The notes beneath the pieces are model-generated. The model did no database searches. It saw only the letters and a program-made list of their open reading frames with translations, and had not been told where the DNA came from. Of a stretch of DNA of 64,000 bases, positions 13,770-52,197 are shown one piece after another. Position 1 is the first letter of the stretch. Every line of letters begins with the position of its first letter. The translations under genes were made by a program, and so were the position numbers. The DNA lies in IMG/VR virus record IMGVR_UViG_3300046787_000286, positions 150,007-214,006 of that record, one strand, 5' to 3'.

Positions 13770-13826
13770 ATTATAGCAAAAGGGCAATAATTGGTCAACC
13801 AGTAAAAAGTAGTACTCAAGTATTAC
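13770..13826 (-). promoter_or_regulatory. early promoter cassette with 18-bp palindrome
   Basis: TTGACC-17-TATAAT (13770-13798); GTAGTACTCAAGTATTAC at 13809-13826. Confidence 0.85.
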
Positions 13827-14155
13827 AGTTGATCGGGCCAGTCACGGAACAGTGCATGCTGGATATCCCCTGCTACAAACTGGTTGAACGACTTGTGTTT
13901 TGTTTCGAGCTCGCCTTCTAGTGGTGCAACACGTTTGAACGCAGAGTCCATTTGCGCCATGTCCTTGAATTCCATGAGTATCATCCATTCAGGCATGTCA
14001 GCAATCGAACGGAATCCCATTTTGCATCTTGTGATACGATAGCTTTCCATACGACCTTCGGATACCAAATGATCAAAGAATCCCTTCATGCCATTTACCC
14101 ACTCGAGGTCAGAAATGTCGCCTTGTTTATTTGCCCAAATTGTATAAATGTCCAT
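13823..14155 (-). CDS. dimeric alpha/beta-barrel-type protein (DUF6614-like)
   Basis: MDIYTIW...YRITRCKMGF...MEFKDMAQMDSAF...FRDWP; family recalled from motif. Confidence 0.6.
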   Translation of the reverse strand: MDIYTIWANKQGDISDLEWVNGMKGFFDHLVSEGRMESYRITRCKMGFRSIADMPEWMILMEFKDMAQMDSAFKRVAPLEGELETKHKSFNQFVAGDIQHALFRDWPDQL

Positions 14156-14583
14156 TAGCAAGGTCCCAGTAGTTCGTAGCCGTCAAATTGTGCTTTGTAG
14201 TTGGCACTTTCGCCCAGGTACAAATACTTGTATCCTGATGATTTGTAATATGCACACTCATGTTCCAAGCTACGGCGACCTAGTTCCAGACTAGGGGTCT
14301 GATAGTCCCATGCAAATTGCATGCTCTCTACGTTGTATTCATCCCAGCGACGACATAAACTCCATGCAACAATTTGATCGTTGTGATAGTAAATGTGAAT
14401 ATCGTTTGCTTTGTCTTGAAACTGACTCAAGAAAAGTGGCATCACACTCATAAATTGTTTGTGAGCACAATACTGCCTATAAATCTGCTCAAACGGTTCT
14501 ACACTAGATGCCCAGGTCCATCTAGCTGTTTCAGGGTACTCATTATAGTTTGTATGAGCTAGTTTAATTCTACAAAATTTCAT
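14155..14583 (-). CDS. stand-alone ATE_C / Bpt-like aminoacyl-tRNA-protein transferase domain (GNAT fold)
   Basis: IYRQYC, WDY...LGRRSLEHEC..K..GYKYLYLG...YKAQF...E.L matches the ATE1/Bpt C-terminal signature. Confidence 0.72.
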   Translation of the reverse strand: MKFCRIKLAHTNYNEYPETARWTWASSVEPFEQIYRQYCAHKQFMSVMPLFLSQFQDKANDIHIYYHNDQIVAWSLCRRWDEYNVESMQFAWDYQTPSLELGRRSLEHECAYYKSSGYKYLYLGESANYKAQFDGYELLGPC

Positions 14584-15077
14584 TTTTCATAACGCCAAGT
14601 AACTACATCGTCTAGAGACTTTTGATCCCATGTATCATAGTAGCCTTGCGATTTTAATTTGTCTGCGGCATTATTTAACTTGCTTAATTTCTGAATTACT
14701 AAAAGCCCGCACAAACCAAAATTCATGTTTACTCGGTTAACATACTCTGGCGCATCGGGATGGTCTTCGAGTATAACATAGTTTATGGGTATTAGTGTTT
14801 GATTCATGTTACTAACCCATTCCTGCAAGGATACTGGATCAATTGTGCGGTGATCAAAACACACTACTACAACATCTTTATGTTCTAGCATGCTAATACT
14901 TTCACGAATTACATCTGAGAATTCAAACACTTCGCAAAATATTGTACTGATCATGTCAGACAGTCTTGCAGCTCGAGCATACGGACAAGGTGCCCAGTTG
15001 GCCAGATCAGGATGTTCGACTTCTACAAACTCGATCATCCATTGATCAAGTTCTGCCTTGATTTTTACTTGGTCCAT
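14580..15077 (-). CDS. DUF1415-like protein
   Basis: W..FVE...PCPYAR, DHP, C-terminal GYY..W. Confidence 0.55.
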   Translation of the reverse strand: MDQVKIKAELDQWMIEFVEVEHPDLANWAPCPYARAARLSDMISTIFCEVFEFSDVIRESISMLEHKDVVVVCFDHRTIDPVSLQEWVSNMNQTLIPINYVILEDHPDAPEYVNRVNMNFGLCGLLVIQKLSKLNNAADKLKSQGYYDTWDQKSLDDVVTWRYEK

Positions 15078-15391
15078 TACTTAAACAATATCAATGCCAT
15101 GCAACTAGCTTGTAGAATAAACCCAATACCGATTGTAATAATGTTAAGCATGTCTTTGAGTACAACTGCTCGCATAAACAACAAAATCAACCCACCCCAG
15201 AGAAACAGGATCATGTCTAGGCCAGGAGTCTTGTCGCTTAGACCCGACATCAGTGCTAGGAAGCTAGGCAGTGTTGCACAATGCAACACAATTGCTGATA
15301 GCCATCCCAGTGTGTCTGCTGAAAGTTTAGCAAGGCTGTCTGTAAGGAATTCACGGATAGCAATAATTGTCATTGGAAATTTAAAAGGCAT
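15077..15391 (-). CDS. 3-TM membrane protein
   Basis: Three hydrophobic segments; follows the cell-wall hydrolase. Confidence 0.7.
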   Translation of the reverse strand: MPFKFPMTIIAIREFLTDSLAKLSADTLGWLSAIVLHCATLPSFLALMSGLSDKTPGLDMILFLWGGLILLFMRAVVLKDMLNIITIGIGFILQASCMALILFK

Positions 15392-15393
15392 TG

Positions 15394-15966
15394 TTATGCT
15401 CCGTAAAAAATGTGACGACCAATTTTATCAATCTTGGGCTTTTTCCAACCTGGACTGACATAATCCGCATGGTAAAATAATGCTTCTTTAAGTCCCGGCA
15501 GTCGGAAGTTTTCTAGCAAAACTTTTTTAGCCACTTCCTCAGACTCTCGCCATAGTGGTGTATGCACTGGACGAACTTTATGTGTAGTTTCGCATACCCA
15601 GCTAAACTGACAGATCAGTTTTTCATATATAACATTCTTTTGATAAACAACTCCGCACACTGAATCAGCAAAGCGGCCGGATTCAACTCGGTTCATTGTT
15701 ACCTGGGCTACAGCTACTTTGCCTTCGAATGATTCCGATGCAGCTTCCCAATAAATGTTTCGTGTCAAGCAATCAAGTTGCTTGATTTTCTCTGTTGTAC
15801 TGACATAACCCGCGGGCATGCTTTCGATGTCAGAACGAAGATCGTTGAGTTTGTGGTTACTAACAGCAATAACTGCTAGTGCCACTAACCAAAGTCCGGC
15901 AGCTTTTAATGCTCGCGAACTCCACGTTGTAATTTGATTATTAATGTAGTTTACTTGTGCTTTCAT
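15394..15966 (-). CDS. cell wall hydrolase, SleB/CwlJ (Hydrolase_2) family, with N-terminal anchor
   Basis: CLTRNIYWEA.SE...VAQVTMNRV...VCGVVYQ...CQFSW...FYHADYV.P.W...IGRHIFY. Confidence 0.92.
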   Translation of the reverse strand: MKAQVNYINNQITTWSSRALKAAGLWLVALAVIAVSNHKLNDLRSDIESMPAGYVSTTEKIKQLDCLTRNIYWEAASESFEGKVAVAQVTMNRVESGRFADSVCGVVYQKNVIYEKLICQFSWVCETTHKVRPVHTPLWRESEEVAKKVLLENFRLPGLKEALFYHADYVSPGWKKPKIDKIGRHIFYGA

Positions 15967-16046
15967 GGTAGTTTTACTTACTCAATTGGACTACGAACCA
16001 GTGAGTTACTGGTTCAAACGAATGCTTTTTGTCGTTATGTTAGCCG

Positions 16047-16439
16047 TTAACGGTTATCTTTGTCTTGAGCTTGAAGTTTGTTCCAAGTTTCAAGTTTATC
16101 CTTGATTCGTTGTTCCAACTCACGATATTGGTTGCCCAACTCCCGGAGTTCTTCCCACTCAGATTCAAGTTTGTGATTTACCGTTAAGAGATTGATGCGC
16201 TCTTCGATGCGCTTTAACATTGTTACAAGGCTCTCGCCGTTGATCTCAATGTCGGCACCCTCGCCCTGCAAACTTATTTTACCTGATGGATTTACATTGA
16301 GTGGCGAGCTAATTCTATAGTCGACTCCAGAGGTAACCCAAGGCGATGCCATTGTGTATGATGTGCTTGACGCAGAACCTATTGTTAGATTAGCGTCAAG
16401 ACTTGAGAGCGATACTGTTGGTGATACAGTATAAGTCAT
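16047..16439 (-). CDS. hypothetical protein
   Basis: Ser/Thr-rich N-terminus, coiled-coil C-terminus. Confidence 0.7.
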   Translation of the reverse strand: MTYTVSPTVSLSSLDANLTIGSASSTSYTMASPWVTSGVDYRISSPLNVNPSGKISLQGEGADIEINGESLVTMLKRIEERINLLTVNHKLESEWEELRELGNQYRELEQRIKDKLETWNKLQAQDKDNR

Positions 16440-16640
16440 TTACTTTGCAGCCAATGCCTCTTTTTCAGCAGTGATTTCTTTGCGGCGTTCTTTAATGCCC
16501 TTGCTCATTTCTTGAAGAGCTTTGCGAGCGCGAGCTGCCGATGCCTTTACACCTTTTGCTGTAAACTTTTCGTTTTCGGCAATGTATGTTTCGTAAGCGG
16601 TAACAATTTGTTCGTGTTGTGTAGGTGTTGGTGATGTCAT
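16440..16640 (-). CDS. histone H1-like (Hc1-family) small basic protein
   Basis: ENEKF..KGVKASAARARKALQE...RRKEI; AAGGAG RBS; promoter at 16667-16694. Confidence 0.75.
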   Translation of the reverse strand: MTSPTPTQHEQIVTAYETYIAENEKFTAKGVKASAARARKALQEMSKGIKERRKEITAEKEALAAK

Positions 16641-16700
16641 AATATTCTCCTTGATAGACAAAAGTAATTATAACACTTTCCGCACACTTGTCAAATTTCT

Positions 16701-16970: not shown

Positions 16971-16987
16971 TTAAAAAGGCCAAAAGA

Positions 16988-17007: not shown

Positions 17008-17027
17008 GTAGAAGAAGCACAAGCTGA

Positions 17028-17635: not shown

Positions 17636-17729
17636 TCGATTTCCTTTTGCAGTTTTGATAAGTTAATTATACCAGATTTAGGGTTTTTCGTCAACCGTTT
17701 TTGTATAGAAAAAAGTTAGTACTTAACAC

Positions 17730-19256
17730 TTACTTGTTGATCAGGTGTCGCACAGCTTCTAATTCAGGAATGTAGTCACCAAGTTGACTGTTTCTGGCTG
17801 CGTCCAATTTATCATTGAATTCAAAAAACTTACGCAACTTCTCTACATCAAAGGTAGGATTTGTTTTGTAATACTCGTACATAGAATCAATTGCGCTCTT
17901 GTTAGATTTGCCATCGCTCATGTACATATTGGTTTTCATACACCTAGACAAACTGTCTAACGCCATCTCAACATTGGGATGGATAAACGGGCTTTGATGT
18001 TCGACATAATTTATCTGTACGTACACCGAAGTGTCTGGCAATTCTCGATCTAAAAATTCATAAAGCAAATGTAAGTTCGTAACATTGTAAATTCCTGGAA
18101 CACAGTTGATAGATATACGATGCCCATGGCTTTTTAATAATTTTATATTTTTAATAATAGTATCAAAGTTACTGCCCCAACGCCAATAATCGTTCACACG
18201 CCCGTATCCGTCTAAACTTATGCTGAAATTTACTACAGAAAAGTGATTGCACAGATTTAAAAAGCGTTGACTAATTTTTTGTCCGTTTGTGCCAAACGTG
18301 AGTTCAAAATCTGTTTTGTTTGCTGCTATACATCTTTCCATGAAAGTGAGAACTTCCGGGATAACAGTTGGATCGCCACCGGTCAAGTATATCCGTGACA
18401 ATGGTGACAATGTATTGATGTCGATCCTATCAATATTGGAATATTGGTACTGCTCGGTATCATTTACCCACTTACTAAAAGTGATGTTGTGCTGTTTAAA
18501 TTCAGCTTCAATCCGATGACTGTATGCTGGACGGCAACCTCTGCACATTAGATTGCACTTGTTGCTCAGTCGCAATTCATATAGATAAGGATGAGTAATC
18601 TTGTCGAGATCCTCAAACGATTGGATGTTTAATTTATTAATCCAATCCCGAGTTTCAAATTGCCGATAGCTCTCAATACCTTTATCTTCGTATTCTTCGT
18701 AGCAAAACCCGCAGTGCTCAGGTATGCGTTCTCCTGCTAACATTTTTTGTCTAATAGCCTGATAATCAGGATTGGTCTTCCAGTCAACAATTTTATCAGG
18801 GGTTGTTACATTTGCCCTGGCTCTGGGACAAAGGCGTGTGGTGCCATTTTCCTCAGTGAAATTTATCCATGGGTAAATGCAAAAACTTTTATTCTCGGTT
18901 GTTAGTTTGTCAATTGAGTGAGCAGCTAGCACATTGGCATTGTCTTTGTATACTACATCATAGCCGCGTTGGTCAATCTCTTCCATGATCTTTATAGTAC
19001 TCAACAATGGCTTCCAATTAGTCCATTGACTAATCGGCTGATCTAATAGAACAATTTGATCAAAGTAATCAGCCAACTTGACTATAGCGCCAAACGGTAT
19101 GTCTAAAACAGTAGTATGATAAAATCCATCATGGGCAGGCACAAAGTCTGCCTGACTAATAAGACCGTGATTAATTGTGTTATGCGTTGCGGCCAACACA
19201 CTTACACGACGATCGGTATCTTCATCGTTGTTTCCTAAATATAAAACTTTGTTCAT
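17730..19256 (-). CDS. radical SAM enzyme with N-terminal twitch/SPASM-like Cys cluster
   Basis: CIYPW...C...CGFC; CNLMCRGC; GGDP; TNG; SLDG. Confidence 0.9.
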   Translation of the reverse strand: MNKVLYLGNNDEDTDRRVSVLAATHNTINHGLISQADFVPAHDGFYHTTVLDIPFGAIVKLADYFDQIVLLDQPISQWTNWKPLLSTIKIMEEIDQRGYDVVYKDNANVLAAHSIDKLTTENKSFCIYPWINFTEENGTTRLCPRARANVTTPDKIVDWKTNPDYQAIRQKMLAGERIPEHCGFCYEEYEDKGIESYRQFETRDWINKLNIQSFEDLDKITHPYLYELRLSNKCNLMCRGCRPAYSHRIEAEFKQHNITFSKWVNDTEQYQYSNIDRIDINTLSPLSRIYLTGGDPTVIPEVLTFMERCIAANKTDFELTFGTNGQKISQRFLNLCNHFSVVNFSISLDGYGRVNDYWRWGSNFDTIIKNIKLLKSHGHRISINCVPGIYNVTNLHLLYEFLDRELPDTSVYVQINYVEHQSPFIHPNVEMALDSLSRCMKTNMYMSDGKSNKSAIDSMYEYYKTNPTFDVEKLRKFFEFNDKLDAARNSQLGDYIPELEAVRHLINK

Positions 19257-20035: not shown

Positions 20036-20044
20036 AACGATTCC

Positions 20045-20398
20045 TTAGACCAGCACAGAGGACATGTTGCTGGAGTAGCTAGCAATGAAATTTTCGCCAA
20101 CATCCAGGCTCACATAAGTGTCGCCTTGCATGCCTTGCTCAGAGTAGCCAACATCGCTATCGTCAAGGCCCATGGCAGTCAACAATTCTTTCAAGTCTTT
20201 TTCAAATTGACGATCTGTATAAATCAATCCGTCTTTGTTTACGTCCCAAGACTTGGTGTCAAAGTAAACACGGAGTTCGCCAAAGTCTTGCTCGTCATTA
20301 ACATACGCTAGGTTAATGCCAGTGACCTTAACGTCCTTGGCAACTTCTGACCAGTAGCCGCATCCGTTTGTGGACAAAATTGCAGTGACTTTACGCAT
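20045..20398 (-). CDS. hypothetical early protein
   Basis: GYWS...GELRVYF...IYTD..F...YSEQGMQG; AAGGAG RBS. Confidence 0.75.
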   Translation of the reverse strand: MRKVTAILSTNGCGYWSEVAKDVKVTGINLAYVNDEQDFGELRVYFDTKSWDVNKDGLIYTDRQFEKDLKELLTAMGLDDSDVGYSEQGMQGDTYVSLDVGENFIASYSSNMSSVLV

Positions 20399-20427: not shown

Positions 20428-20507
20428 ATTATAGCAAATTGGGCAATTCTGGTCAACCAAAAAAATACCCTGCCAACTAGCAGGGTTTTGTAACACTTTG
20501 GGTTTAA
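20428..20507 (-). promoter_or_regulatory. palindrome-terminator-promoter cassette
   Basis: TTGACC-17-TATAAT (20428-20456), hairpin 20467-20486, degenerate palindrome 20490-20507. Confidence 0.85.
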
Positions 20508-23532: not shown

Positions 23533-23554
23533 TTCAAACTCCTTTTGTTTCTTT

Positions 23555-23596
23555 ATGTGTATATTATAGCAAATCGGGCAATTTTGGTCAACCAAA
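23555..23596. repeat. 42-bp exact repeat containing a sigma70 promoter (copy 1)
   Basis: ATGTGTATATTATAGCAAATCGGGCAATTTTGGTCAACCAAA, identical at 23823-23864 and 52111-52152. Confidence 0.95.
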
Positions 23597-23824
23597 TGCT
23601 TTAACTAATCCTGTGAGTCCAAGTCCCAAGGCCACAAGATTCACTGCCATTTGTGGTTTATTTGCAACACGAACAGTCCATGTCAGGAACAATATTGTGC
23701 CTACAAAAAATGCAAGAATATTGTAAGGATAGGCTGCAGGTCCCACAGCGTTGAGACTGTGCCCTGCTATGATAAACACAGCACCGGCCCACTGTAAAAT
23801 TTCGTTTGTATCTAATTTCTTCAT
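23588..23824 (-). CDS. 3-TM small membrane protein (predicted leaderless), bounded by direct repeats
   Basis: ATG lies in repeat copy 2; TGA lies in the -35 box of copy 1. Confidence 0.75.
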   Translation of the reverse strand: MKKLDTNEILQWAGAVFIIAGHSLNAVGPAAYPYNILAFFVGTILFLTWTVRVANKPQMAVNLVALGLGLTGLVKAFG

Positions 23825-23911
23825 GTGTATATTATAGCAAATCGGGCAATTTTGGTCAACCAAAAAAATACCCCGCATTTCTGCAGGGTTAATGTAACAC
23901 TTGAGTATTAC
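23823..23911 (-). promoter_or_regulatory. palindrome-terminator-promoter cassette (contains repeat copy 2)
   Basis: TTGACC-17-TATAAT, hairpin 23870-23889, GTAACACTTGAGTATTAC at 23894-23911. Confidence 0.9.
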
Positions 23912-24117
23912 TTTTTAAACTCGTGTTCCACGTAGTACTTGACTAGGCTTTGCTGGCACATAGTAATCAAGTCACCGTGGGAGTCCGGCACAATGAAACG
24001 ATATGGGCATCGTCCCCAAGTGCCATGTTTTGTAAATTGCGAATACCAACGTCGATGTTCTTTGTTGGCAGGATCAAATACTGTCCAGGGACGGGCTTTG
24101 AAATGCAATACGCTCAT
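23908..24117 (-). CDS. hypothetical protein
   Basis: FDPANKEHR...WGRCPYRF; AAGGAG RBS. Confidence 0.7.
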   Translation of the reverse strand: MSVLHFKARPWTVFDPANKEHRRWYSQFTKHGTWGRCPYRFIVPDSHGDLITMCQQSLVKYYVEHEFKK

Positions 24118-24125: not shown

Positions 24126-24686
24126 TTAGTTGATTACAAGATGTTTAAAATATTCAAAATGTTGTTCTAGTGTCCATGTTTCTGGGTCAATGGCGGTACC
24201 GTCATGTGTTTCAAACTTGGCCTCAAACACTTGACTGTATCGACGGAATGGCAACCACATGTCTGGTGTATGACTTGCCCAACCTGCTTCCTTGAGTTGT
24301 GCATGTTTTGCACGGCTCAATTTCACCGTAGGAGCGTTCAGTGCTTGCTCTACAGAGATAACACCGGCCAACAAAAGGTCACGGATACGTGCGGCAGGAA
24401 TTAGATGCTCAAAATCTGTTTCTGCGTCTGCACCTTGCTCATGATAGTGAGCGCCCATGCTGTCACGTTGCTTGATGCAGTACTCGTGATATCGACGAAG
24501 TTTTTCGTCAATGTCGTTGCGAAGCTCTCGCAACAGTTGCTGATCATTGCGCACAGCCTTGTATTCATCAACCAAGCGAGTTAGATGATTGGTACAGTGT
24601 TGAGACACAGTTTTGTATGTAGCAGTACTGCGTTGAGTCTTGCCGTACACAGGAGCAGTAAATTGTTGGAGAGATTCTTTTAACAT
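24126..24686 (-). CDS. hypothetical protein with HNH-like EH-x-I-P motif
   Basis: DFEHLIPA...H..L..AGW...P....PFRRY. Confidence 0.65.
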   Translation of the reverse strand: MLKESLQQFTAPVYGKTQRSTATYKTVSQHCTNHLTRLVDEYKAVRNDQQLLRELRNDIDEKLRRYHEYCIKQRDSMGAHYHEQGADAETDFEHLIPAARIRDLLLAGVISVEQALNAPTVKLSRAKHAQLKEAGWASHTPDMWLPFRRYSQVFEAKFETHDGTAIDPETWTLEQHFEYFKHLVIN

Positions 24687-25102
24687 TAGATAACCTCAAA
24701 AAGATTTGGGTCCAGGTCAACAACATTTGAATAACGATTGTGTTGATGCCCACTGTCTACTGTTACACGAGCATGGCATACTCGGCACAAACATTCAATG
24801 TTACTAGGATCAGTATTCATCTTATTGCCATCAATGTGATTCACGTCAATTTGAGAAGGATGAGTAATTGTAGTAGTGCAAGCAAATCCATGATGCGTGT
24901 CTCGATTCTCGCAACCACGCTTTAATTTCCAAGCATCAAACTCTGCTTTACGAGCTCCTCGATGGTCAGGGCAAGCCTGCATCCATTTAAAGCCGGGTCC
25001 TCCGTGGTTTAACTTAGAATACTTTTTATGGTAAGATACAAGATTATTGCATCCATCCATGACACATTTTGGTGCCCAGTTCTTTGAAATAGTTGCCTTC
25101 AT
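24686..25102 (-). CDS. HNH endonuclease
   Basis: IDVNHIDGNKMNTDPSNIECLCRVCH; additional Cys pairs. Confidence 0.85.
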   Translation of the reverse strand: MKATISKNWAPKCVMDGCNNLVSYHKKYSKLNHGGPGFKWMQACPDHRGARKAEFDAWKLKRGCENRDTHHGFACTTTITHPSQIDVNHIDGNKMNTDPSNIECLCRVCHARVTVDSGHQHNRYSNVVDLDPNLFEVI

Positions 25103-25103
25103 G

Positions 25104-26150
25104 TTACGCCTCAGGGAAAAGACCGTCTGCAATATTGCCAGCCTCGACACCCATTTTAGCACCTTCGCCGTGGTAGGGCAAGTTCAATGAGCCACCGTTG
25201 CGTAAATGCAACTCACGCAAGAAGTTTGCCATTGCGCTGGGCGCTGACCAAGTTGCACCTGGGTTCACGTGTTCCCACTGTACTTTGGCTTTGGCGTGGA
25301 TCAAGGCACTTGACTTGAATGTGGGCTTGATGCTTTCCAGCAAAGTCTTCATCCAACCTGCAGGCAGTTTTTCGTTGGGGTTTGTGCTAGAGATGCGGTG
25401 CAACTCATACAAGCCAATAAAACAACCCTGATCAATTTCTTCTTGCAGTGGGAAAGTGTCTTTGATTGCGCTGAGAATGTTGAACAGCACTGTGCCGCTT
25501 TCGTCTACTTCGATGCCTTTTTGTGCATACTTAAAGTGACTCATAAAGTAGTCATTGTCGCCACGCAGGTTGTCACTAGCACGAGAGCCTTTGTCTTGTA
25601 AGTCAATGCCGCAAGCATCAAATTGATCTTGCATTGTGCGAGCACGAACGTTTTTAATGTCACGGCTACCGTTTTTATAGCGCACCAGAGCATTACGATG
25701 CAAATCGCCAGGGCCTAAGCGTTTGACGCCGGTGTCGTTGAGCATTTCGAATGCATAACTTGCAAAGTTAGGGTCGTTAGTTTCCACCACAGCACAAGGA
25801 ACTTCCGCAAAGCCCAGGATAGCCGAGGCAATAGTACGATGTTGACCATCATATGTATCCGTTTGCTTTTTACCGTTCAGGCGGCATGCGCTTACAGGTG
25901 AGCAGATACGTGGATCCCACTTTTTCATGATGTTGATAATATGCTTGTGCAATACATCACGTTGAACTTCGTAGTCAATACTCAGTTCATCAATAGGAAC
26001 CATTGCAGTATTAGGGAAGGCAAACTTGCTGGCTTTGGCTGCTGCTCGCCATGTATCGAGTTCTTTTTGTGTCACACCATAGTGTGCTTTGAGCTGGGCT
26101 TCAACTTCGCGAGCCACATCAATGAGTTTACGAGTAAGGCGTTTTGCCAT
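25104..26150 (-). CDS. ParB/Srx-fold protein with DGQHR motif
   Basis: IDYEVQR...YDGQHRT...F..LN..G.K. Confidence 0.8.
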   Translation of the reverse strand: MAKRLTRKLIDVAREVEAQLKAHYGVTQKELDTWRAAAKASKFAFPNTAMVPIDELSIDYEVQRDVLHKHIINIMKKWDPRICSPVSACRLNGKKQTDTYDGQHRTIASAILGFAEVPCAVVETNDPNFASYAFEMLNDTGVKRLGPGDLHRNALVRYKNGSRDIKNVRARTMQDQFDACGIDLQDKGSRASDNLRGDNDYFMSHFKYAQKGIEVDESGTVLFNILSAIKDTFPLQEEIDQGCFIGLYELHRISSTNPNEKLPAGWMKTLLESIKPTFKSSALIHAKAKVQWEHVNPGATWSAPSAMANFLRELHLRNGGSLNLPYHGEGAKMGVEAGNIADGLFPEA

Positions 26151-26226: not shown

Positions 26227-26284
26227 ATTATATAGCAAATACCCTATGCTGTCAACCTCTAAATGTGTAGTACTATCGTATTAC
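26227..26284 (-). promoter_or_regulatory. early promoter with palindrome
   Basis: TTGACA-17-TATAAT; GTAGTACTATCGTATTAC at 26267-26284. Confidence 0.85.
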
Positions 26285-29471: not shown

Positions 29472-30041
29472 ATGATACCATACACATACTTGATCGGTTG
29501 GAGTAAAGAAAATAAATTTTATTACGGAGCGAGATGGGCAAAAAATTGCCACCCCTCTGATCTGTGGAAAACATACTTTACCTCTTCAACACATGTTAAA
29601 AAATATCGCAATCTCTACGGTGATCCTGATATTATTCAAATTAGAAAAACATTTAGTGACGTCGATCAGTGCAGAATTTATGAGCAAAAAACTCTACGTC
29701 GAATTAATGTATTATACAATAATAAATGGTTAAACAAGAACATAAACGGAAGATTCCTTCCGTATGGTCCTCAAACAGAAGAACACAAAGCTGCGAGATC
29801 GATTGCCCTTAAAGGCCATGCACCAACATTCACTAGAAAACATTCAGCAGAATCCTTAGAAAAAATGCGTTTAGCTCAACTTGGAAAACCTAAGTCTGCG
29901 GAGCATATCCTTGCTATGCGTAGCCGTCCTCAAGATACTGCGAAACTTGTTTGTCCACATTGTGGTAAAGAAGGCGATTATAAGAATATGAAACGTTGGC
30001 ATATGGACAGGTGCAAACATCAATCCCAGAGGCCGGAATAA
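29472..30041 (+). mobile_element. free-standing homing endonuclease (GIY-YIG-like with NUMOD3 repeats and C-terminal Zn ribbon)
   Basis: YTYLI..FYYG.R..YFTSS; HSAESLEKMR; CPHCGKEG..NMKRWH..C; antisense insertion with TAAATA promoter. Confidence 0.8.
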
Positions 30042-30646: not shown

Positions 30647-30882
30647 TTTACAGGTTGCATGCTTTCTGTTGTATAGTCAAGGAAATCGCCAGCTTCACTG
30701 CGGATAAAAGCAGCATGTGGATCGATAATTACTACTTCGCAATCGTGGTTGGTAATTTCGTAATCTGTAAACGAATGATCCTTGGACCCTTCGTGATATA
30801 CACGAAACCAAATCTCGTTGTCAAGCCCGCGAATTAAAAATCCTCGTTGTCCGATTGCGAGAGCTTCTTCCGTATTTCCCAT
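30643..30882 (-). CDS. hypothetical protein
   Basis: FRVY...FTDY...DY pattern. Confidence 0.6.
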   Translation of the reverse strand: MGNTEEALAIGQRGFLIRGLDNEIWFRVYHEGSKDHSFTDYEITNHDCEVVIIDPHAAFIRSEAGDFLDYTTESMQPVK

Positions 30883-31022
30883 GTACCGTCTCCTCTGTCA
30901 TACCATTCTAAATTATCGCCAGGTTTCCAGCCCACTTCGTCTAGCATTTCCTGGGGAAAGGGAAGAATTAAATCTTCGCCTTCCTCTTCGATCATTACAC
31001 TCCATGTTTTGACTTTTGTCAT
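30834..31022 (-). CDS. AbrB/MazE/SpoVT-type DNA-binding protein
   Basis: DLILPFPQEMLDEVGWKPGDNLEW. Confidence 0.75.
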   Translation of the reverse strand: MTKVKTWSVMIEEEGEDLILPFPQEMLDEVGWKPGDNLEWYDRGDGTWEIRKKLSQSDNEDF

Positions 31023-33061: not shown

Positions 33062-33131
33062 ATTATACAGGGTTTTTATTTGCTGGTCAAGAGAAACCCG
33101 CCACTTGGGCGGGTTAATACTTTGGGTTGAC
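33062..33131 (-). promoter_or_regulatory. palindrome-terminator-promoter cassette
   Basis: TTGACC-17-TATAAT (33062-33090), hairpin 33095-33115, degenerate palindrome 33114-33131. Confidence 0.8.
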
Positions 33132-33140: not shown

Positions 33141-33407
33141 TTAGACCAAGCCCATTGCCAAAGCGCGATAGCCTGCGGCGATCAACTTGCGTGATGGCTT
33201 GCCAATTTGGTACTCGGTGACCTTGACACCGTTGCCTGCAACGCGGCTGTTGGAGTAAACGCAGAAACCAGCAGCGCGAACGCGACTGACTTCAGCACTC
33301 AAGTTACCAACGCCGAAACGCTTTTTGGCTTCAGATGGGGTTAAAGTTTCGCCATTGTGCAAGGCTGTAAAGACTTTAAAAGTTTTGGATTTAGGATTAA
33401 AACGCAT
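33141..33407 (-). CDS. winged-helix DNA-binding protein
   Basis: L..GETLT..EA..RFGV.NL.AEVS..R..G..VY; promoter TTGCAT-17-TACAAT at 33455-33483. Confidence 0.75.
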   Translation of the reverse strand: MRFNPKSKTFKVFTALHNGETLTPSEAKKRFGVGNLSAEVSRVRAAGFCVYSNSRVAGNGVKVTEYQIGKPSRKLIAAGYRALAMGLV

Positions 33408-33507
33408 AATATTACCTTTCATGTAAGTTAGCTGTTTGCGTACAGCATATGACTATTGTATGCGAGTATAACACAAAATGCAACGGCTTTTGGATGCAGT
33501 TTAGCCA

Positions 33508-33513
33508 TAAATA
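33508..33513 (+). promoter_or_regulatory. T4-type late promoter
   Basis: ATAAATA about 22 nt upstream of the fibre gene. Confidence 0.65.
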
Positions 33514-33535
33514 ACAAAAAAGGTAGAGTTCTCAC

Positions 33536-42818: not shown

Positions 42819-42876
42819 ATTATAGCAAAACGGAAAATTCTGGTCAACCAAGCAAAATGTAATACTTTTGTAATAC
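42819..42876 (-). promoter_or_regulatory. early promoter with palindrome
   Basis: TTGACC-17-TATAAT; GTAATACTTTTGTAATAC at 42859-42876. Confidence 0.85.
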
Positions 42877-42925
42877 TAGTGTTTATACTGAGATATTTCC
42901 TCCAATAATATGTGTAAATATTTGT

Positions 42926-43303
42926 ATGAACTCCAGAGAATACGCAAAATTTAAAAGACTGTTTGTTGGGCCAATTATGCCAAGAAAAGTAGTCAAAGAA
43001 AGATTTTATAGTGTAATGCCTACAAAATCAAATCCTCGGCCCTTGTTAGAAAAGGGAGATGTTAGAAAGTTGTGGGACAGAGCCGCGGTGCGTAGATATG
43101 CTACTCCTTCTTGGGCTGACAAAAATCAAATTGATCAACTATACACTGAGGCTAGAAAACTAACACTAGAAACTGGAATACCACACGAAGTTGATCATAT
43201 TATACCTGTCAAGCATCCTTTGGTATGTGGGCTACATGTAGAAACTAATTTACGTATTCTATCAGGAACTGTAAACAATAAAAAATCAAATTTTTATAAT
43301 TAA
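42926..43303 (+). CDS. HNH endonuclease
   Basis: ATPSWAD...HEVDHIIP...VCGLHVETNL...N.KKSN; TAAATA 5 nt upstream. Confidence 0.88.
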   Translation: MNSREYAKFKRLFVGPIMPRKVVKERFYSVMPTKSNPRPLLEKGDVRKLWDRAAVRRYATPSWADKNQIDQLYTEARKLTLETGIPHEVDHIIPVKHPLVCGLHVETNLRILSGTVNNKKSNFYN

Positions 43304-43364
43304 TAGGGTTCCTTCTTATGGTTTCTACTGAGTATCATGGTAAATACTACGAAGGAAAAATATC

Positions 43365-43520
43365 ATGAAATTACTACAATGGATCAAAAGTCTGTTTGCA
43401 GCACCGTCTTATCAAGACCAGCTAGACAGTTTCGTAGCTAGCAAACGCCCAACATCAACTGCCGAAGTTGAACATTGGCTCAGAGTCTACGATCAACATC
43501 AAAAAGGATGCACACTATGA
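43365..43520 (+). CDS. 51-aa hypothetical protein (not in ORF track)
   Basis: TAAATA at 43341, AAGGA RBS; MKLLQWIKSLF...AEVEHWLRVYD. Confidence 0.6.
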   Translation: MKLLQWIKSLFAAPSYQDQLDSFVASKRPTSTAEVEHWLRVYDQHQKGCTL

Positions 43521-43612
43521 AAAAGTTTTTAACAGCAGTTTGGGATTTTTTTGTCGAGTGGGGCGAGTATCGCTACCAAGTGGCCAAACGTCGTGGCTTC
43601 ATGACTTACTGA
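43517..43612 (+). CDS. 31-aa peptide (not in ORF track)
   Basis: ATGA-coupled, AAGGA RBS; MKKFLTAVWDFFVEWGEYRY. Confidence 0.5.
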   Translation: MKKFLTAVWDFFVEWGEYRYQVAKRRGFMTY

Positions 43613-49135: not shown

Positions 49136-49170
49136 AATAAGTAACCGGTTACCCAATTACTTATCATGTA

Positions 49171-50178
49171 TCACAGAGAACGACATTGCGAATTTGTTAC
49201 AACTTCCACTAAAATGTTGTCAGTTTTTGCCATCGCCGCAACATCTTGCCCTAGATTCACACTTGCACGGAATCGATGTGCCCCATTCTGCAATCGAAGA
49301 CTATTCCCGTAATAAGAATAAAATTCAACATTGTGCAAATAACAAACACGCTTGACTGGCTGTCCGTAAATGTTTTGCACTTCGACCATTACAGTAGGGG
49401 ACGATGATCTAAAGTACTGATCAATATCAACCAGCTTTTGGATGTCATAAAACTCACGATCTTGAATAAAGTAACGCAAGTCTGCACAACCAAACCTACA
49501 CATTTTGTTGCCAGTTTTTTCTGCGGCATCATTAAATGCATTTACAAACCGTTCGTCCCAGCTAATTGTTATTGGGATGGACACCTGGGTGTTTCGGTAT
49601 GCATCCATGTATACATCAGGGGTCTCCATTTTTACACGAAATGCGCGACGAGGGAAATCACGCAGTACAGCACGAAAAATGTCATCTCCTCGGCTTCGCT
49701 CGTCCAGGATGCTTTCTGCACGAGTGCTTAATGCACCGCCGTCGATCCCTTTTTCAGTAGCACTTTTGGCCAATAACCGTTGTGCCATTACACTTTCTGT
49801 AATCCAAACATCCATGGTCAACTTTACAAACCCTGCACCGTTGTAGCGTTCAACGATTTTGTATTCGTCAATTAGCCCAGAACTGTAAGTAACGATTTCA
49901 TCACGGGTTAGTTTGCTGTTACGCAGTTCGCTTTCGCTTAGGACCACAGTTCCTGCAACTTGCTCACTTGCTAAACGGAATGCTTGTTTCTTTGCTTTTT
50001 CAAAATCCGGTGCTTGGGATTCTACACGAATGTAGTATACCTTCTTTTGGTCTTTCAAATAAGACTTAACTGCAATAACCACACCTAGCGGACTAGGTGT
50101 AATCAATACTGACACCGGTGGTACTGCTAGGGCATTAAAACTCAATGCCACTAGCAGAGTAGCTACTAGCTGTTTCAT
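49171..50178 (-). CDS. exported protein with LPP20/FlgT-N-like motif
   Basis: Signal peptide; AKKQAFRLASEQVAG.VV.SE. Confidence 0.65.
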   Translation of the reverse strand: MKQLVATLLVALSFNALAVPPVSVLITPSPLGVVIAVKSYLKDQKKVYYIRVESQAPDFEKAKKQAFRLASEQVAGTVVLSESELRNSKLTRDEIVTYSSGLIDEYKIVERYNGAGFVKLTMDVWITESVMAQRLLAKSATEKGIDGGALSTRAESILDERSRGDDIFRAVLRDFPRRAFRVKMETPDVYMDAYRNTQVSIPITISWDERFVNAFNDAAEKTGNKMCRFGCADLRYFIQDREFYDIQKLVDIDQYFRSSSPTVMVEVQNIYGQPVKRVCYLHNVEFYSYYGNSLRLQNGAHRFRASVNLGQDVAAMAKTDNILVEVVTNSQCRSL

Positions 50179-50849
50179 TGCTGAACACGCCACTTATTGC
50201 GGAAGAACTCGCTAGCACGTTCTGAATCTTTGTCCCAACGAATTGTAACCTGCACAGTTTGGCGATCCACAATCTTCTCGTCAACTGCACGAACTCCACG
50301 CAAGATGCCTGCGGCATTGATACGCACAGTTTCTGTCAAGGTTTGCACAGTGTCATTGGTGTTTTCGCGAATGGCCCAGTTTGTTTCTTTAGTGGCCTCG
50401 TCGTCAGTCATGCTAACTTCTTCGTTGGCATTGATACGTTGTTTAATACGATCATTTGCCTTTTCAATGTTCTTAGCAATCACAGTTTTAACCTGCGAGC
50501 TAGACACGTCTTCTTGGATGAAGTGACGCAGTTTGGCCTTGGCTCGCATTTCTGCGACACGGAACGCCTGTTCACGGTTGTTTTCAGAGTTGCCGTAGCT
50601 TGGTGCATAAGCAGTAACTTCGATTGCTTTGATATCAGTCTTGCTACACATAGCATCTGTCATGCCAAATGCACCAGTGCCAAATGCACAATCATATTCT
50701 AGCTTGATACCTTTTCGGGTAAAGTTGCTAGACAGTTTCTGCGAATGGATAGGTGTCATGGACCCGGGGTTTTCTGCTTTGTTTAATTTAACAGAGCTAC
50801 ATGCACTCAATGTCAGTGCAATCGCGGTAACTAAAAGAACACGTTTCAT
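50175..50849 (-). CDS. lipoprotein (LPP20-like)
   Basis: Lipobox LSAC; A...AEMRAK..L..F...GILRGV; promoter at 50886-50914. Confidence 0.75.
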   Translation of the reverse strand: MKRVLLVTAIALTLSACSSVKLNKAENPGSMTPIHSQKLSSNFTRKGIKLEYDCAFGTGAFGMTDAMCSKTDIKAIEVTAYAPSYGNSENNREQAFRVAEMRAKAKLRHFIQEDVSSSQVKTVIAKNIEKANDRIKQRINANEEVSMTDDEATKETNWAIRENTNDTVQTLTETVRINAAGILRGVRAVDEKIVDRQTVQVTIRWDKDSERASEFFRNKWRVQQ

Positions 50850-50885
50850 ATGGCCTCCTTAGCCTGAAAGTTTGTTAATGTGTAT

Positions 50886-50914
50886 ATTATAGCAAAATGG
50901 AAATTATTGGTCAA
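50886..50914 (-). promoter_or_regulatory. sigma70 early promoter
   Basis: TTGACC-17-TATAAT. Confidence 0.85.
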
Positions 50915-51101
50915 CCGATTCCACATCCTGCAAGATACGCTTGAGTTCGTCGATGTTGACTTCCAACATCTTGACAACAGCATAGGCCATCATACGCACA
51001 TGGGCATCTTCTGATTTACGATTCTCGTTTTCACGAGCCAAGTATGCTTCCTTGCCGGCGATTGTGTTACGCAGATTTTCTGCTACGGTTTGGATGTTCA
51101 T
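50904..51101 (-). CDS. hypothetical protein
   Basis: 65 aa, ATGA-coupled. Confidence 0.65.
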   Translation of the reverse strand: MNIQTVAENLRNTIAGKEAYLARENENRKSEDAHVRMMAYAVVKMLEVNIDELKRILQDVESVDQ

Positions 51102-51307
51102 TTCAATTCCTTTACAACCCAAGGTTCAGGTTTAACTTTCCAATGATCCTTGTTCCAGATACCATGAACATTTTCTTCCCACAATCCAATGATTGCGTTC
51201 ATGTTAACGGCATGTGCTTCTGCATCCTCTTTGGTGTAAAACTTCATAGGAACTGGACTTGGATCATTGGGACTCATTGCCCCGTGTGTGAATTTTGGTT
51301 CGTTCAT
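51098..51307 (-). CDS. hypothetical protein
   Basis: 69 aa, ATGA-coupled. Confidence 0.6.
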   Translation of the reverse strand: MNEPKFTHGAMSPNDPSPVPMKFYTKEDAEAHAVNMNAIIGLWEENVHGIWNKDHWKVKPEPWVVKELK

Positions 51308-51483
51308 TTTGATTCTTTCAATCGTTTTACATTCAAGAAAATTCGTTGTTCATGCAAGCCAACAGCGGCCTGTCGCAGTTCTCTCAATCTTGCTTCGCTT
51401 TGATTTTCTTTGGATTTATTGTGTTCTACGATAAACTGATCCTTGACTAATTGTAGCAAGATTTCAGTTGCTTCCCAGTTCAT
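51304..51483 (-). CDS. 59-aa hypothetical protein (not in ORF track)
   Basis: ATGA overlaps at both ends. Confidence 0.55.
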   Translation of the reverse strand: MNWEATEILLQLVKDQFIVEHNKSKENQSEARLRELRQAAVGLHEQRIFLNVKRLKESK

Positions 51484-51698
51484 TTTTCAACTCCAAACTG
51501 TTTCAACATATCATACGCATTGTCATCATCGACAACAAGACTGGCACATTCTCGCACAATCAACTCAGCGAACAAGTCAAGGTCAAAGTGACGGGTCACT
51601 GATACTGACTTGATAGTAGGATCAACCACAGAACTAAAATATTCTTGTCGGCGTTCTATATGAGCCTGCTCATACAGTTTTTTAATTCGTAGGTTCAT
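51480..51698 (-). CDS. FAELIV.EC/FGVE family protein
   Basis: LFAELIVREC...KQFGVEK. Confidence 0.75.
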   Translation of the reverse strand: MNLRIKKLYEQAHIERRQEYFSSVVDPTIKSVSVTRHFDLDLFAELIVRECASLVVDDDNAYDMLKQFGVEK

Positions 51699-51922
51699 TC
51701 TTCAACTCCGAAATCTTTGTTAATAGCACGGATGTAATCTTCCGATGTTGGTACTTGCCCTTTTTCTTCCATTACCACATCTGTAATTAGAATACTTGCA
51801 ATTACCTTACGGTGCATATCTTGCATAATCAACTCAGAGAACTTTCGCTTGTCAAGATACCGAAAACCATCGTGCTCTTCGGTAGTGGCTTGTTCGGCTA
51901 GTTGTTTAATCGGTTCGTTCAT
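51695..51922 (-). CDS. FAELIV.EC/FGVEE family protein
   Basis: MNEPIKQLAEQA...KFSELI...FGVEE. Confidence 0.75.
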   Translation of the reverse strand: MNEPIKQLAEQATTEEHDGFRYLDKRKFSELIMQDMHRKVIASILITDVVMEEKGQVPTSEDYIRAINKDFGVEE

Positions 51923-52089
51923 ACCATCTCTACCTTGCCGTTGAGTTGTTGTGCAACTTTGTCAGCTTGGGCACGGCTACGGTATGTTTGGGGCTGACGC
52001 ACGAAAGAAATCTTACCACTGCGGTCGTATTCGTTACGGCCAATTGCAAATTTCTCGTCGCTTTGATCCAGGGCAATCACATAAAACAT
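51919..52089 (-). CDS. 56-aa early protein (not in ORF track)
   Basis: AAGGA RBS after promoter; ATGA overlap. Confidence 0.55.
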   Translation of the reverse strand: MFYVIALDQSDEKFAIGRNEYDRSGKISFVRQPQTYRSRAQADKVAQQLNGKVEMV

Positions 52090-52110
52090 ACTCGGTCCTT
52101 TTTGCTGTCT

Positions 52111-52197
52111 ATGTGTATATTATAGCAAATCGGGCAATTTTGGTCAACCAAAAGAAAAGCCCCTTGCGGGGCTCAAAATGTACTACTTGAGTATTAC
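52111..52197 (-). promoter_or_regulatory. palindrome-terminator-promoter cassette (contains repeat copy 3)
   Basis: 42-bp repeat 52111-52152, hairpin 52158-52173, GTACTACTTGAGTATTAC at 52180-52197. Confidence 0.9.

What the first reader, a model, noticed from the sequence alone, without database searches (positions are those of the whole stretch)
13809..52197. 18-bp palindrome GTAnTACT-NN-AGTAnTAC at helically phased distances upstream of early promoters
Seen: good copies at 13809, 23894, 26267, 42859 and 52180, and degenerate ones at 17716, 20490 and 33114. Gaps between the -35 hexamer and the palindrome are 10, 11, 11 (13809, 26267, 42859), 21, 23 (17716, 33114) and 32, 33, 34 nt (52180, 20490, 23894), i.e. 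about one, two or three helical turns. In four of the five longer cases a terminator hairpin fills the gap. Established: same-face spacing is typical of class I activators contacting the RNAP alpha-CTD. Inference: an undescribed dimeric regulator controls the early regulon. Candidates in the window are the winged-helix protein (33141-33407) and the AbrB-like protein (30834-31022); a host factor or a recombination site is also possible.
Basis: partly seen in the sequence, partly recalled or inferred. Interest (0 to 1): 0.75.

Follow-up and report, generated by a model that had tools for sequence, protein, structure and literature searches.

The report
Palindromic operator in phage early-promoter cassettes
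An 18-bp two-fold symmetric DNA motif sits at fixed, roughly 11-bp-stepped distances upstream of the strong early promoters of an uncultured freshwater jumbo phage and hundreds of its relatives; it is most likely the docking site of a still unidentified dimeric regulator.

Summary
All eight sites and all eight gap values reproduce. The window has five copies with at most 1 mismatch, against 0.01 expected.

The window is the end of a 214-kb IMG/VR record of an uncultured freshwater jumbo phage of the T4 superfamily. The same palindrome-plus-promoter unit occurs in more than 119 viral contigs. It is absent from the closest cultured relatives.

Consensus, in the direction of transcription: GTA-R-TACT-YR-AGTA-Y-TAC. 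In a sample chosen without reference to the motif, 26 of 31 sites have a consensus promoter on one side. Gaps fall at 0-1, 10-11, 20-24, 32-35 and 42-43 nt (period 11.0-11.1 bp, p <= 2e-4).

Invariant arms, no compensatory changes and weak hairpin energies argue for recognition of duplex DNA by a protein rather than an RNA hairpin.

The unit is a PeSL-like cassette (terminator plus early promoter, known in T4-type phages) with an extra palindromic module. The upstream gene's stop codon is usually the TAA inside the palindrome. Cassettes occur in different gene contexts in different relatives.

The binding protein and the direction of regulation are unknown. A conserved HTH_39 winged-helix protein is only a circumstantial candidate. 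The core promoters are near-perfect, so a classical activator requirement is doubtful.

The parts
13770..13826 (-). Cassette: palindrome 13809-13826 (0 mismatches), 10-nt T-rich spacer, -35 TTGACC 13793-13798, -10 TATAAT 13770-13775. The TAA at palindrome positions 2-4 is the stop codon of ORF 13823-14161.
17666..17733 (-). Cassette with a degenerate palindrome 17716-17733 (4 mismatches; proximal half kept), 21-nt gap holding only an A/T hairpin, -35 TTGACG 17689-17694, -10 17666-17671. The stop codon of the 508-aa radical-SAM ORF lies in the palindrome.
20428..20507 (-). Cassette: half-site-only palindrome 20490-20507 (5 mismatches), terminator hairpin in the 33-nt gap 20457-20489, -35 20451-20456, -10 20428-20433.
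   Evidence: this stretch has 400x depth against about 25x around it in the source metagenome, so it is a repeated cassette
23831..23911 (-). Cassette: palindrome 23894-23911 (1 mismatch), terminator in the 34-nt gap (-15.4 kcal/mol), -35 23854-23859, -10 23831-23836. The block 23539-23917 recurs as a unit next to other genes in at least 11 related contigs.
26227..26284 (-). Cassette: palindrome 26267-26284 (1 mismatch), 11-nt gap, -35 TTGACA 26250-26255, -10 26227-26232.
33062..33131 (-). Cassette just downstream of the wHTH gene: degenerate palindrome 33114-33131 (5 mismatches), terminator in the 23-nt gap, -35 33085-33090, -10 33062-33067. This intergenic spot is an insertion hot-spot: 10 relatives have 393-2884 bp here.
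42819..42876 (-). Cassette: palindrome 42859-42876 (1 mismatch; distal centre base is T, and no co-directional gene lies upstream), 11-nt gap, -35 42842-42847, -10 42819-42824.
52119..52197 (-). Cassette: palindrome 52180-52197 (0 mismatches), terminator in the 32-nt gap (-14.9 kcal/mol), -35 52142-52147, -10 52119-52124. The stop codon of ORF 52194-52460 lies inside the palindrome.
33141..33407 (-). Candidate binder (circumstantial only): 88-aa winged-helix protein of family HTH_39, expressed from its own weaker sigma-70-like promoter.
   Evidence: Pfam E = 3.6e-5. It is the only HTH_39 in the record, which has no HTH_3 or RHH_1 match. It is 63-85% identical in more than 160 contigs of the clade. 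AF2 pLDDT 86, helix-helix-helix-wing-helix.
30834..31022 (-). Weaker candidate: 62-aa MazE/AbrB-like protein.
   Evidence: Pfam E = 4e-4, below the cutoff. Found in 3 of 5 related large records.
24..41 (.). Stray copy with 2 mismatches inside coding sequence and no promoter on either side. Probably chance or a relic.

Best explanation
The 18-bp dyad is a duplex-DNA operator for a sequence-specific, two-fold symmetric (dimeric) DNA-binding protein. It has two GTA-R-TAC cores whose centres lie 11 bp apart, plus a symmetric T8/A11.

It forms the promoter-distal module of a repeated PeSL-like early-promoter cassette: [palindrome] - [optional terminator] - [T-rich spacer] - [GG TTGACC, 17 bp, TGnTATAAT] - [leader with a Shine-Dalgarno sequence].

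The module is placed only at about 0, 11, 21, 33 or 43 bp from the -35 hexamer. The bound protein would therefore sit on one face of the helix relative to RNA polymerase and touch it, probably through the alpha C-terminal domain or sigma region 4.

Because the core promoters are already near-consensus, I think it more likely (about 55:45) that the contact damps or times early transcription than that it is needed to switch it on. Possible routes are over-stabilising the polymerase, or competing with it for the T-rich upstream segment. More likely than not the protein is phage-encoded. The conserved HTH_39 winged-helix protein is the best but unproven candidate (about 0.25).

Shown: motif, symmetry, promoter association, quantised spacing, clade-wide conservation.
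Inferred: protein binding, contact with RNA polymerase, sign of regulation, identity of the binder, the 'early' timing of the promoters.
For: Non-random occurrence:
- Five copies in the window against 0.01 expected.
- Heptamer pairs occur almost only at 11 bp.

Promoter association:
- In the motif-selected loci plus the record itself, 189 of 210 sites have a promoter within 80 bp, all but one on one side only.
- In loci selected by a protein rather than the motif, 26 of 31 sites have one. The reversed-pattern control gives 8 sites.
- When anchored on promoters alone, half-sites pile up at 0, 9-12, 20-24, 31-35 and 42-46 nt upstream and hardly occur downstream.

Spacing:
- Period 11.0-11.1 bp, R about 0.8, p <= 2e-4 in two samples.
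- Several visibly different hairpin fillers all give total gaps of 29-36 nt, with variance 2.2.

DNA recognition rather than structure:
- In the protein-selected sample, position 8 is T in 23 of 25 sites and position 11 is A in 22 of 25.
- The half-site centres prefer a purine symmetrically.
- Pairing of positions 4 and 15 occurs in 49% of sites, against 46% expected from the base frequencies alone. Positions 9 and 10 pair in 4%.
- When position 4 is G, position 15 is mostly G.
- The arms were never seen replaced by another complementary sequence.
- Predicted RNA hairpins are -1.7 to -7.6 kcal/mol, two of them no better than shuffles, against -15 for the real terminators.

Conservation and candidate:
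- More than 119 IMG/VR contigs carry the unit, and 212-349-kb relatives have 2-6 perfect copies each.
- The nearest cultured relatives have neither the motif nor the wHTH protein.
- Pfam scans of about 60 window proteins found no other sequence-specific regulator.
Against: - No binding data of any kind exist. The protein-DNA co-fold was not run by the tool.
- The spacing classes equal sums of fixed modules (0; a T-rich spacer of about 10 nt; a terminator plus T run of about 33 nt). Quantisation could therefore come from tight packing of functional blocks rather than from helical phasing. An 11.0-bp period is also slightly longer than the 10.5-bp repeat of B-DNA.
- Many sites are orthologous or belong to a repeat family that may be homogenised by recombination, so counts overstate independence.
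- About half of the TTGACC promoters have no palindrome. These are the ones embedded in the 3' end of the upstream gene. The element is therefore dispensable for promoter function.
- Co-occurrence of the wHTH protein with the motif is confounded by shared ancestry. The distant homologue in Pelagibacter phage HTVC008M comes without the motif.
- One 71%-complete relative has the motif but no detected wHTH gene.
Confidence: 0.6

Rival explanations
1. The palindrome is the A+T-rich 'stem-loop' of a PeSL cassette and works in RNA. As a weak hairpin followed by a U run, it would attenuate read-through from the upstream gene, alone in the short-gap class and backed by a G+C-rich terminator in the long-gap class.
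For: - PeSLs of other T4-type phages carry stem-loops of conserved sequence just upstream of early promoters (PMC2839356, PMC4122927).
- In the 8-12-nt class, 60-66% of sites are followed by at least 4 T in 6 nt, and positions 4 and 15 pair in 64-69%. The figures for pairing are 43-47% in the terminator class and 4% in the gap-0 class.
- An A run often precedes the palindrome.
- Perfect copies fold at about -6 kcal/mol.
Against: - There is no covariation. Pairing of positions 4 and 15 equals what the base frequencies predict (49% against 46%). Sites with G at position 4 mostly have G at position 15.
- The arms keep one fixed sequence instead of drifting to other complementary pairs.
- A third to a half of sites have a central mismatch that leaves 3+3-bp stems (-1.7 to -3.2 kcal/mol, no better than shuffles).
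- The gap-0 class has no U run at all.
- Quantised distance to the -35 hexamer is not needed for a terminator.
Confidence: 0.1
2. The palindrome is mainly a recombination feature. It would be either extra homology kept uniform by gene conversion among mobile promoter cassettes, or the target of a dedicated recombinase or nuclease that moves [palindrome-terminator-promoter-ORF] units. The latter would be integron-like, with the stop codon inside the site.
For: - Whole cassettes recur in different gene contexts, and homology ends at the distal edge of the palindrome (window 23539-23917 in at least 11 contigs).
- Indels between relatives map to cassette positions.
- The upstream stop codon lies at palindrome positions 2-4 in 73 of 124 cases.
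- The promoter spacer and leader are also unusually conserved, as expected for a homogenised repeat.
- PeSL-mediated shuffling and mini-circles have been shown experimentally in RB49/phi1 (PMC2839356).
Against: - PeSL shuffling works without any palindrome.
- The insertion hot-spot downstream of the wHTH gene has no good palindrome in most relatives.
- Homology breakpoints coincide with gene ends anyway, so they do not single out the palindrome.
- Selective conservation of 14 of 18 positions with free centre bases, and phase-locked spacing to the -35 hexamer, are not explained by recombination.
- No recombinase was found next to the sites. There are only weak SegE-like GIY-YIG and HNH matches elsewhere.
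Confidence: 0.1
3. The palindrome is a protein roadblock or insulator. A bound protein at the very end of each upstream gene would stop read-through polymerases, or convergent late transcription, from running over the next early promoter, without touching the initiating polymerase.
For: - The site always starts at, or within about 7 nt of, the upstream stop codon.
- It precedes the terminator when there is one.
- It is two-fold symmetric, so it could act in both directions.
Against: - It is also present where no co-directional gene lies upstream (window 42859; and after a tRNA in the record).
- A roadblock needs no fixed register with the -35 hexamer.
- Contact with the stop codon is equally explained by genome compaction.
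Confidence: 0.08
4. This is a rival only on who binds, and it is compatible with the main reading. The binder would be a host transcription factor exploited by the phage, not a phage protein.
For: - Early promoters must work before any phage gene is expressed.
- No phage protein is linked to the site.
- The record is only 62% complete.
Against: - The motif is conserved unchanged across many diverged phage contigs that need not share one host.
- A scan of 185,579 species genomes for the motif-plus-promoter pattern found only three contigs, all in one Haliscomenobacter MAG. One of them carries the same phage cassette gene. There is therefore no sign of a host regulon, although the pattern searched was phage-specific.
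Confidence: 0.2

Closest known systems
PeSL (promoter-early stem-loop) cassettes of T4-type phages (Arbiol et al. 2010, PMC2839356; Comeau et al. 2014, PMC4122927)
   Same: - A repeated intergenic unit made of a terminator-like stem-loop, an A/T-rich segment, a near-consensus sigma-70 early promoter and a Shine-Dalgarno leader.
- It lies between small ORFs of unknown function in a T4-superfamily genome.
- It is associated with gene-cassette indels between relatives.
   Different: - The papers describe no palindromic operator-like module ('palindrom' occurs 0 times).
- Here an 18-bp dyad of fixed sequence precedes the stem-loop, or replaces it.
- The dyad keeps discrete distances to the -35 hexamer and usually contains the upstream stop codon.
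- The host phages are jumbo relatives of Atu_ph07 and Phosso, not T4-like phages proper.
phi29 protein p4 sites, and CRP class I/II sites (own knowledge, not tested here)
   Same: A dimer-type site upstream of the -35 hexamer at helically related positions, which in those systems allows contact with the polymerase alpha C-terminal domain. For p4, the same contact activates a weak promoter and represses a strong one.
   Different: - The sequence is unrelated.
- Site centres here are about -44.5, -55, -65.5, -77 and -87, not -41.5, -61.5 and -71.5.
- The promoters here are uniformly strong.
- No protein, contact or effect has been shown.
E. coli trp operator / TrpR (own knowledge; a look-alike only)
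   Same: An 18-bp dyad of the same geometry. The trp operator core agrees with 12 of the 14 specified positions.
   Different: - It differs at the symmetric positions 7 and 12, which belong to the CTAG core that TrpR reads.
- The trp operator overlaps the -10 region rather than lying upstream.
- No TrpR-like protein was found.
T4 MotA/AsiA promoter switching
   Same: A phage-encoded, sequence-specific device acting on host sigma-70 polymerase at a defined promoter position in a T4-superfamily phage.
   Different: - The MotA box replaces the -35 hexamer at about -30. Here the -35 hexamer is perfect and the site lies upstream of it.
- No AsiA or MotA domain was detected in five records. That search had no positive control.

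Membership tests
PeSL cassette (T4-type phages) | Near-consensus sigma-70-type early promoter followed by a Shine-Dalgarno leader | tested here: met
   TTGACC, 17-bp spacer, TGnTATAAT, then a conserved leader with AAGGAG. Logo of 150 unique promoters.
PeSL cassette (T4-type phages) | Stable stem-loop/terminator immediately upstream of the promoter | tested here: inconclusive
   Met in the 29-36-nt class (hairpins of about -15 kcal/mol plus a T run). Not met in the 0-1 and 8-12-nt classes, where only the weak palindrome is present.
PeSL cassette (T4-type phages) | Sits at indel or replacement points between related genomes | tested here: met
   The cassette block 23539-23917 occurs in other gene contexts. 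There are insertions of 393-2884 bp at the cassette after the wHTH gene. One contig joint skips ORF 20045-20398.
PeSL cassette (T4-type phages) | Formation of mini-circles by recombination between cassettes | not testable with these tools
   Needs inverse PCR on infected cells. The host is unknown.
Class I activator site | Site upstream of -35 at positions related by whole helical turns | tested here: met
   Gaps cluster at 0-1, 8-12, 18-24, 29-36 and 42-43 nt. Period 11.0-11.1 bp, p <= 2e-4. The result is confounded with modular packing.
Class I activator site | The target promoter is sub-optimal and depends on the activator | tested here: not met
   The core elements are consensus with and without the palindrome.
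Class I activator site | The bound protein contacts the alpha C-terminal domain and raises transcription | not testable with these tools
   No protein has been identified and no expression data exist.
Intrinsic terminator / structured RNA | Stable stem supported by compensatory changes | tested here: not met
   Energies are -1.7 to -7.6 kcal/mol. Pairing of positions 4 and 15 matches the marginal expectation and the arms are invariant. No Rfam family matches.
TrpR operator | CTAG core in each half-site | tested here: not met
   Positions 7 and 12 are C and G in 153 and 154 of 156 sites, where the trp operator has G and C. The trp sequence is from my own knowledge.
HTH_39 winged-helix protein as the binder | DNA-binding fold, presence wherever the motif is present, and specific binding | tested here: inconclusive
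   Fold: met. Co-occurrence: 4 of 5 large relatives have it, and 3 cultured relatives have neither protein nor motif, but this is confounded by ancestry. Binding: not tested (job not folded).

The most novel reading that the evidence does not exclude
The palindrome is both an operator and the boundary or recombination site of a phage gene-cassette system. Units of [palindrome-terminator-promoter-ORF] would be moved between genomes by a protein that recognises the dyad, much as integron cassettes carry attC sites that often overlap the stop codon. The same protein would then set the expression of every newly acquired early gene.
Probability: 0.08. Interest if true: 0.85.

Novelty: new variant of a known kind. 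Interest (0 to 1): 0.55.

Why it matters
Early promoter/terminator cassettes (PeSLs) are thought to drive gene shuffling in T4-type phages, but no dedicated regulator site has been described in them.

Here a whole clade of abundant, uncultured freshwater jumbo phages carries a sharply defined operator at phase-locked distances from its early promoters. That defines an 'early regulon' from sequence alone.

The promoters are sigma-70 consensus, so the system can be tested directly in E. coli or in vitro without the unknown host. It may show how jumbo T4-relatives, in which no AsiA or MotA was detected, time their early transcription. The motif is also a practical marker for gene-cassette boundaries and for recognising this clade in metagenomes.

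Tried and rejected
- Protein-DNA co-folding of two wHTH copies with a 30-bp palindrome duplex. The tool did not fold it, so it is not evidence either way.
- Expression evidence. The source is a freshwater metagenome. The one metatranscriptome holding part of the region gave only scattered contigs of 47-225 nt, with no informative ends.
- Cultured relatives. megablast and blastn of the window and of one cassette against 50,697 phage records found nothing relevant. Phosso, Atu_ph07, a Vibrio jumbo phage and HTVC008M lack the motif.
- Known RNA families: none in the window.
- Literature word search for the motif halves: only unrelated primer hits.
- Autoregulation lead. The two small ORFs flanked by the best-conserved palindromic promoters (in L007) show no obvious DNA-binding features by eye. 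The wHTH gene itself has no palindrome upstream, and most relatives have none downstream either.
- NtcA (GTA-N8-TAC), LexA, Fur/Zur, WalR/PhoB and GntR-type boxes were compared from memory and rejected because spacing or sequence is wrong.
- The variance-partition test of terminator lengths is inflated by A/T pairs that can be counted either in the stem or in the flanks. Only the total-gap variance is used.

Full report
THE OBSERVATION

The pattern GTAnTACT-NN-AGTAnTAC occurs five times in the window with at most 1 mismatch, at 13809, 23894, 26267, 42859 and 52180. Dinucleotide shuffles predict 0.01.

Genes here run on the minus strand. Read in that direction, each copy lies upstream of a promoter of the form TTGACC, 17-bp spacer, TGnTATAAT.

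The three 'degenerate' copies keep only the promoter-proximal half-site. Four of the five longer gaps hold G+C-rich hairpins followed by T runs; the two I folded give about -15 kcal/mol. The 17716 gap holds only an A/T hairpin.

WHERE THE WINDOW COMES FROM

The window is the last 64 kb of a 214,006-bp IMG/VR virus record that CheckV rates 62% complete. It comes from a freshwater metagenome.

Its family-B DNA polymerase is 52% identical to that of Sinorhizobium phage Phosso. It is 46% identical to Agrobacterium phage Atu_ph07 and about 43% to the GAP32/121Q group. The phage is therefore an uncultured jumbo member of the T4 superfamily.

The window encodes typical auxiliary genes: GroEL and GroES homologues, ClpP, Hsp20, superoxide dismutase, UvdE, radical-SAM enzymes and a clamp loader.

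THE MOTIF GENOME-WIDE AND CLADE-WIDE

In the whole record there are 86 GTANTAC heptamers. Seven pairs lie exactly 11 bp apart and only one other pair lies within 60 bp. All eight copies with at most 1 mismatch sit upstream of strong minus-strand promoters.

They are mostly lake metagenome contigs of up to 349 kb. Five large relatives (212-349 kb) have 2-6 perfect copies each.

Phosso, Atu_ph07 and a Vibrio jumbo phage have none. No cultured phage matched a whole cassette.

Pooling those loci with the record itself gives 210 sites. Of these, 189 have a promoter within 80 bp, all but one on one side only.

That sample was biased by my own search pattern, so I took a second one. It consists of 80 loci (1.22 Mb) fetched through a protein, not through the motif.

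- It holds 31 sites, against 8 for the reversed pattern. Of the 31, 26 have a promoter.
- The gaps are 0 (four sites), 1, 10, 11 (three), 20, 21, 24 (two), 32 (two), 33, 34 (seven), 35, 42 and 43.
- The two gap-24 sites carry a third half-site at gap 10.

Anchoring on promoters alone (596 unique promoter matches), GTANTAC heptamers pile up at 0, 9-12, 20-24, 31-35 and 42-46 nt upstream. They are almost absent downstream.

A Rayleigh scan gives R = 0.83 at 11.0 bp for the record itself and R = 0.81 at 11.1 bp for the unbiased sample. Both give p <= 2e-4 against uniform gaps.

ANATOMY

- Position 8 is T and position 11 is A in the unbiased sample (23 of 25 and 22 of 25). The element is therefore an inverted repeat, not a direct repeat.
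- The half-site centres prefer a purine when each half is read outward-in.
- The consensus is GTA-R-TACT-YR-AGTA-Y-TAC, with A/T-rich flanks.
- The TAA at positions 2-4 is the stop codon of the upstream ORF in 73 of 124 cases, and most other upstream ORFs end within 7 nt before it. Where no co-directional gene lies upstream (window 42859, or after a tRNA), the centre base is not A.
- TTGACC promoters embedded in the 3' end of the preceding gene have no palindrome. In these the upstream stop codon is often the TGA inside the -35 hexamer itself.
- Fourteen promoters with free intergenic space carry a full copy or at least the proximal half.
- TTGACA/TTGACT promoters in the tRNA region of the record have none.

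DNA OR RNA?

- The arms never switch to another complementary sequence.
- Pairing between positions 4 and 15 occurs in 49% of sites. The base frequencies alone predict 46%.
- When position 4 is G, position 15 is usually G as well.
- Predicted hairpins are -1.7 to -7.6 kcal/mol. Two of the five are no better than shuffles.
- No Rfam family matches.

One point favours an RNA role. In the 8-12-nt class the palindrome is more often perfect (64-69%) and followed by a T run (60-66%). A minor attenuator role there is therefore not excluded.

CONTEXT: A PeSL-LIKE CASSETTE

T4-type phages are known to carry PeSLs. These are repeated units of a stem-loop terminator plus an early sigma-70 promoter that flank ORFs of unknown function and mediate modular shuffling (PMC2839356, PMC4122927).

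The unit here has the same plan, and it behaves the same way:

- The block 23539-23917 (palindrome, terminator, promoter, small ORF, next promoter) recurs in at least 11 contigs next to other genes.
- The cassette after the wHTH gene is an insertion hot-spot in 10 relatives.
- One contig joint skips ORF 20045-20398.
- The cassette stretch has 400x depth, against 25x around it, in the source metagenome.

The PeSL papers mention no palindromic module. That module is what is new here.

MECHANISM

The evidence consists of fixed sequence at 14 of 18 positions, two-fold symmetry with 11 bp between half-site centres, A/T-rich flanks, strict promoter association and discrete spacing. I read this as an operator for a dimeric DNA-binding protein that meets RNA polymerase on one face of the helix (confidence 0.6).

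The site centres would lie near -44.5, -55, -65.5, -77 and -87.

The spacing evidence has a caveat. The classes equal sums of modules: nothing, a T-rich spacer of about 10 nt, or a terminator plus T run. Dense packing alone could therefore give steps. Against that, visibly different hairpin designs all give total gaps of 29-36 nt, and no intermediate spacer lengths occur.

On the sign of regulation, the core promoters are near-perfect with or without the palindrome. An activator requirement is therefore not indicated. By analogy with phi29 p4, which represses strong promoters through the same alpha-CTD contact that activates weak ones (own knowledge), I lean slightly towards damping or timing of early transcription.

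WHO BINDS?

- Pfam scans of about 60 window proteins found only the 88-aa HTH_39 winged-helix protein and a sub-threshold MazE/AbrB-like protein.
- The record has no HTH_3 or RHH_1 match and a single HTH_39.
- The wHTH protein is 63-85% identical in more than 160 contigs of the clade, and its putative recognition helix is almost invariant.
- It models confidently (pLDDT 86). It resembles small PadR/ArsR/MarR-type dimeric regulators only weakly, with all matches at E > 1e-3.
- It is absent from the three cultured relatives that lack the motif.
- All of this is confounded by ancestry. A distant homologue in Pelagibacter phage HTVC008M comes without the motif.
- I give this protein about 0.25.

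A scan of species genomes for the motif-plus-promoter pattern hit only three contigs, all in one Haliscomenobacter MAG. One of them carries the same cassette gene as the window. This gives no evidence of a host regulon, and only a weak hint about the host from binning.

VERDICT

I file it as a new variant of a known kind, a PeSL-type cassette with an added operator. Interest 0.55.

Noticed in passing
window 12831, 17469, 23591, 27072 (-35 start, minus strand); seven such promoters in the 214-kb record: Several TTGACC promoters are embedded in the end of the preceding gene, so that the TGA inside the -35 hexamer is that gene's stop codon. This is extreme compaction, and these promoters have no palindrome.
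   Followed up: partly
all TTGACC promoters, e.g. window 52119-52149: The promoter family is conserved beyond the hexamers: GG just upstream of -35 (71-75%), AAwAATTCCC in the spacer, TnTGc before TATAAT, then A..CAT. GGTTGACC with its flanks forms a partial dyad (TTGGT-nn-ACCAA) centred on the -35 hexamer. This could be a second operator or a host sigma preference.
   Followed up: partly
window 33423-33535: This is a divergent control region. The 1334-aa plus-strand gene is preceded by ATAAATA, which resembles the T4 late promoter TATAAATA. The wHTH gene has a weaker TTGCAT, 17-bp spacer, TACAAT promoter without a palindrome.
   Followed up: no
window 29472-30041 (+) and 24686-25162 (-): There is a weak SegE-like GIY-YIG match (E = 1.2e-4) on the opposite strand inside the early region, and a weak HNH_3 match (E = 2.2e-4). 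These may be homing endonucleases.
   Followed up: no
L141-L165, about 20-70 nt after the wHTH stop codon: A second conserved hairpin (GTCCA...TGGAC, within 'cgctgtcc...ggacac') lies between the wHTH gene and its terminator in many relatives. It is not present in this form in the window.
   Followed up: no
L011, L045, L113, L143, L144, L025, L036, L060: Some cassettes carry two palindromes 25-28 bp apart (start to start), or a third lone half-site ending 10 nt before the -35 hexamer. The tandem spacing is not a whole number of helical turns.
   Followed up: partly
G000:C1:1239-15566 (+), outside the window: There is a single open reading frame of 4775 codons at the start of the record. At least three large radical-SAM proteins occur in the record.
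   Followed up: no
L138-L140 (Haliscomenobacter sp. MAG EUL_031 contigs): Three contigs (18-39 kb) of a Bacteroidota MAG carry the motif-plus-promoter pattern, and one of them carries the window's cassette gene. They are probably phage contigs binned with the MAG. The canonical TTGACC/TATAAT promoters fit a Bacteroidota host poorly (own knowledge).
   Followed up: partly
window 42877-43605: This stretch of about 730 bp upstream of the 42859 palindrome has no minus-strand ORF of 60 aa or more. It has only a plus-strand ORF (42926-43303) with no Pfam match.
   Followed up: no
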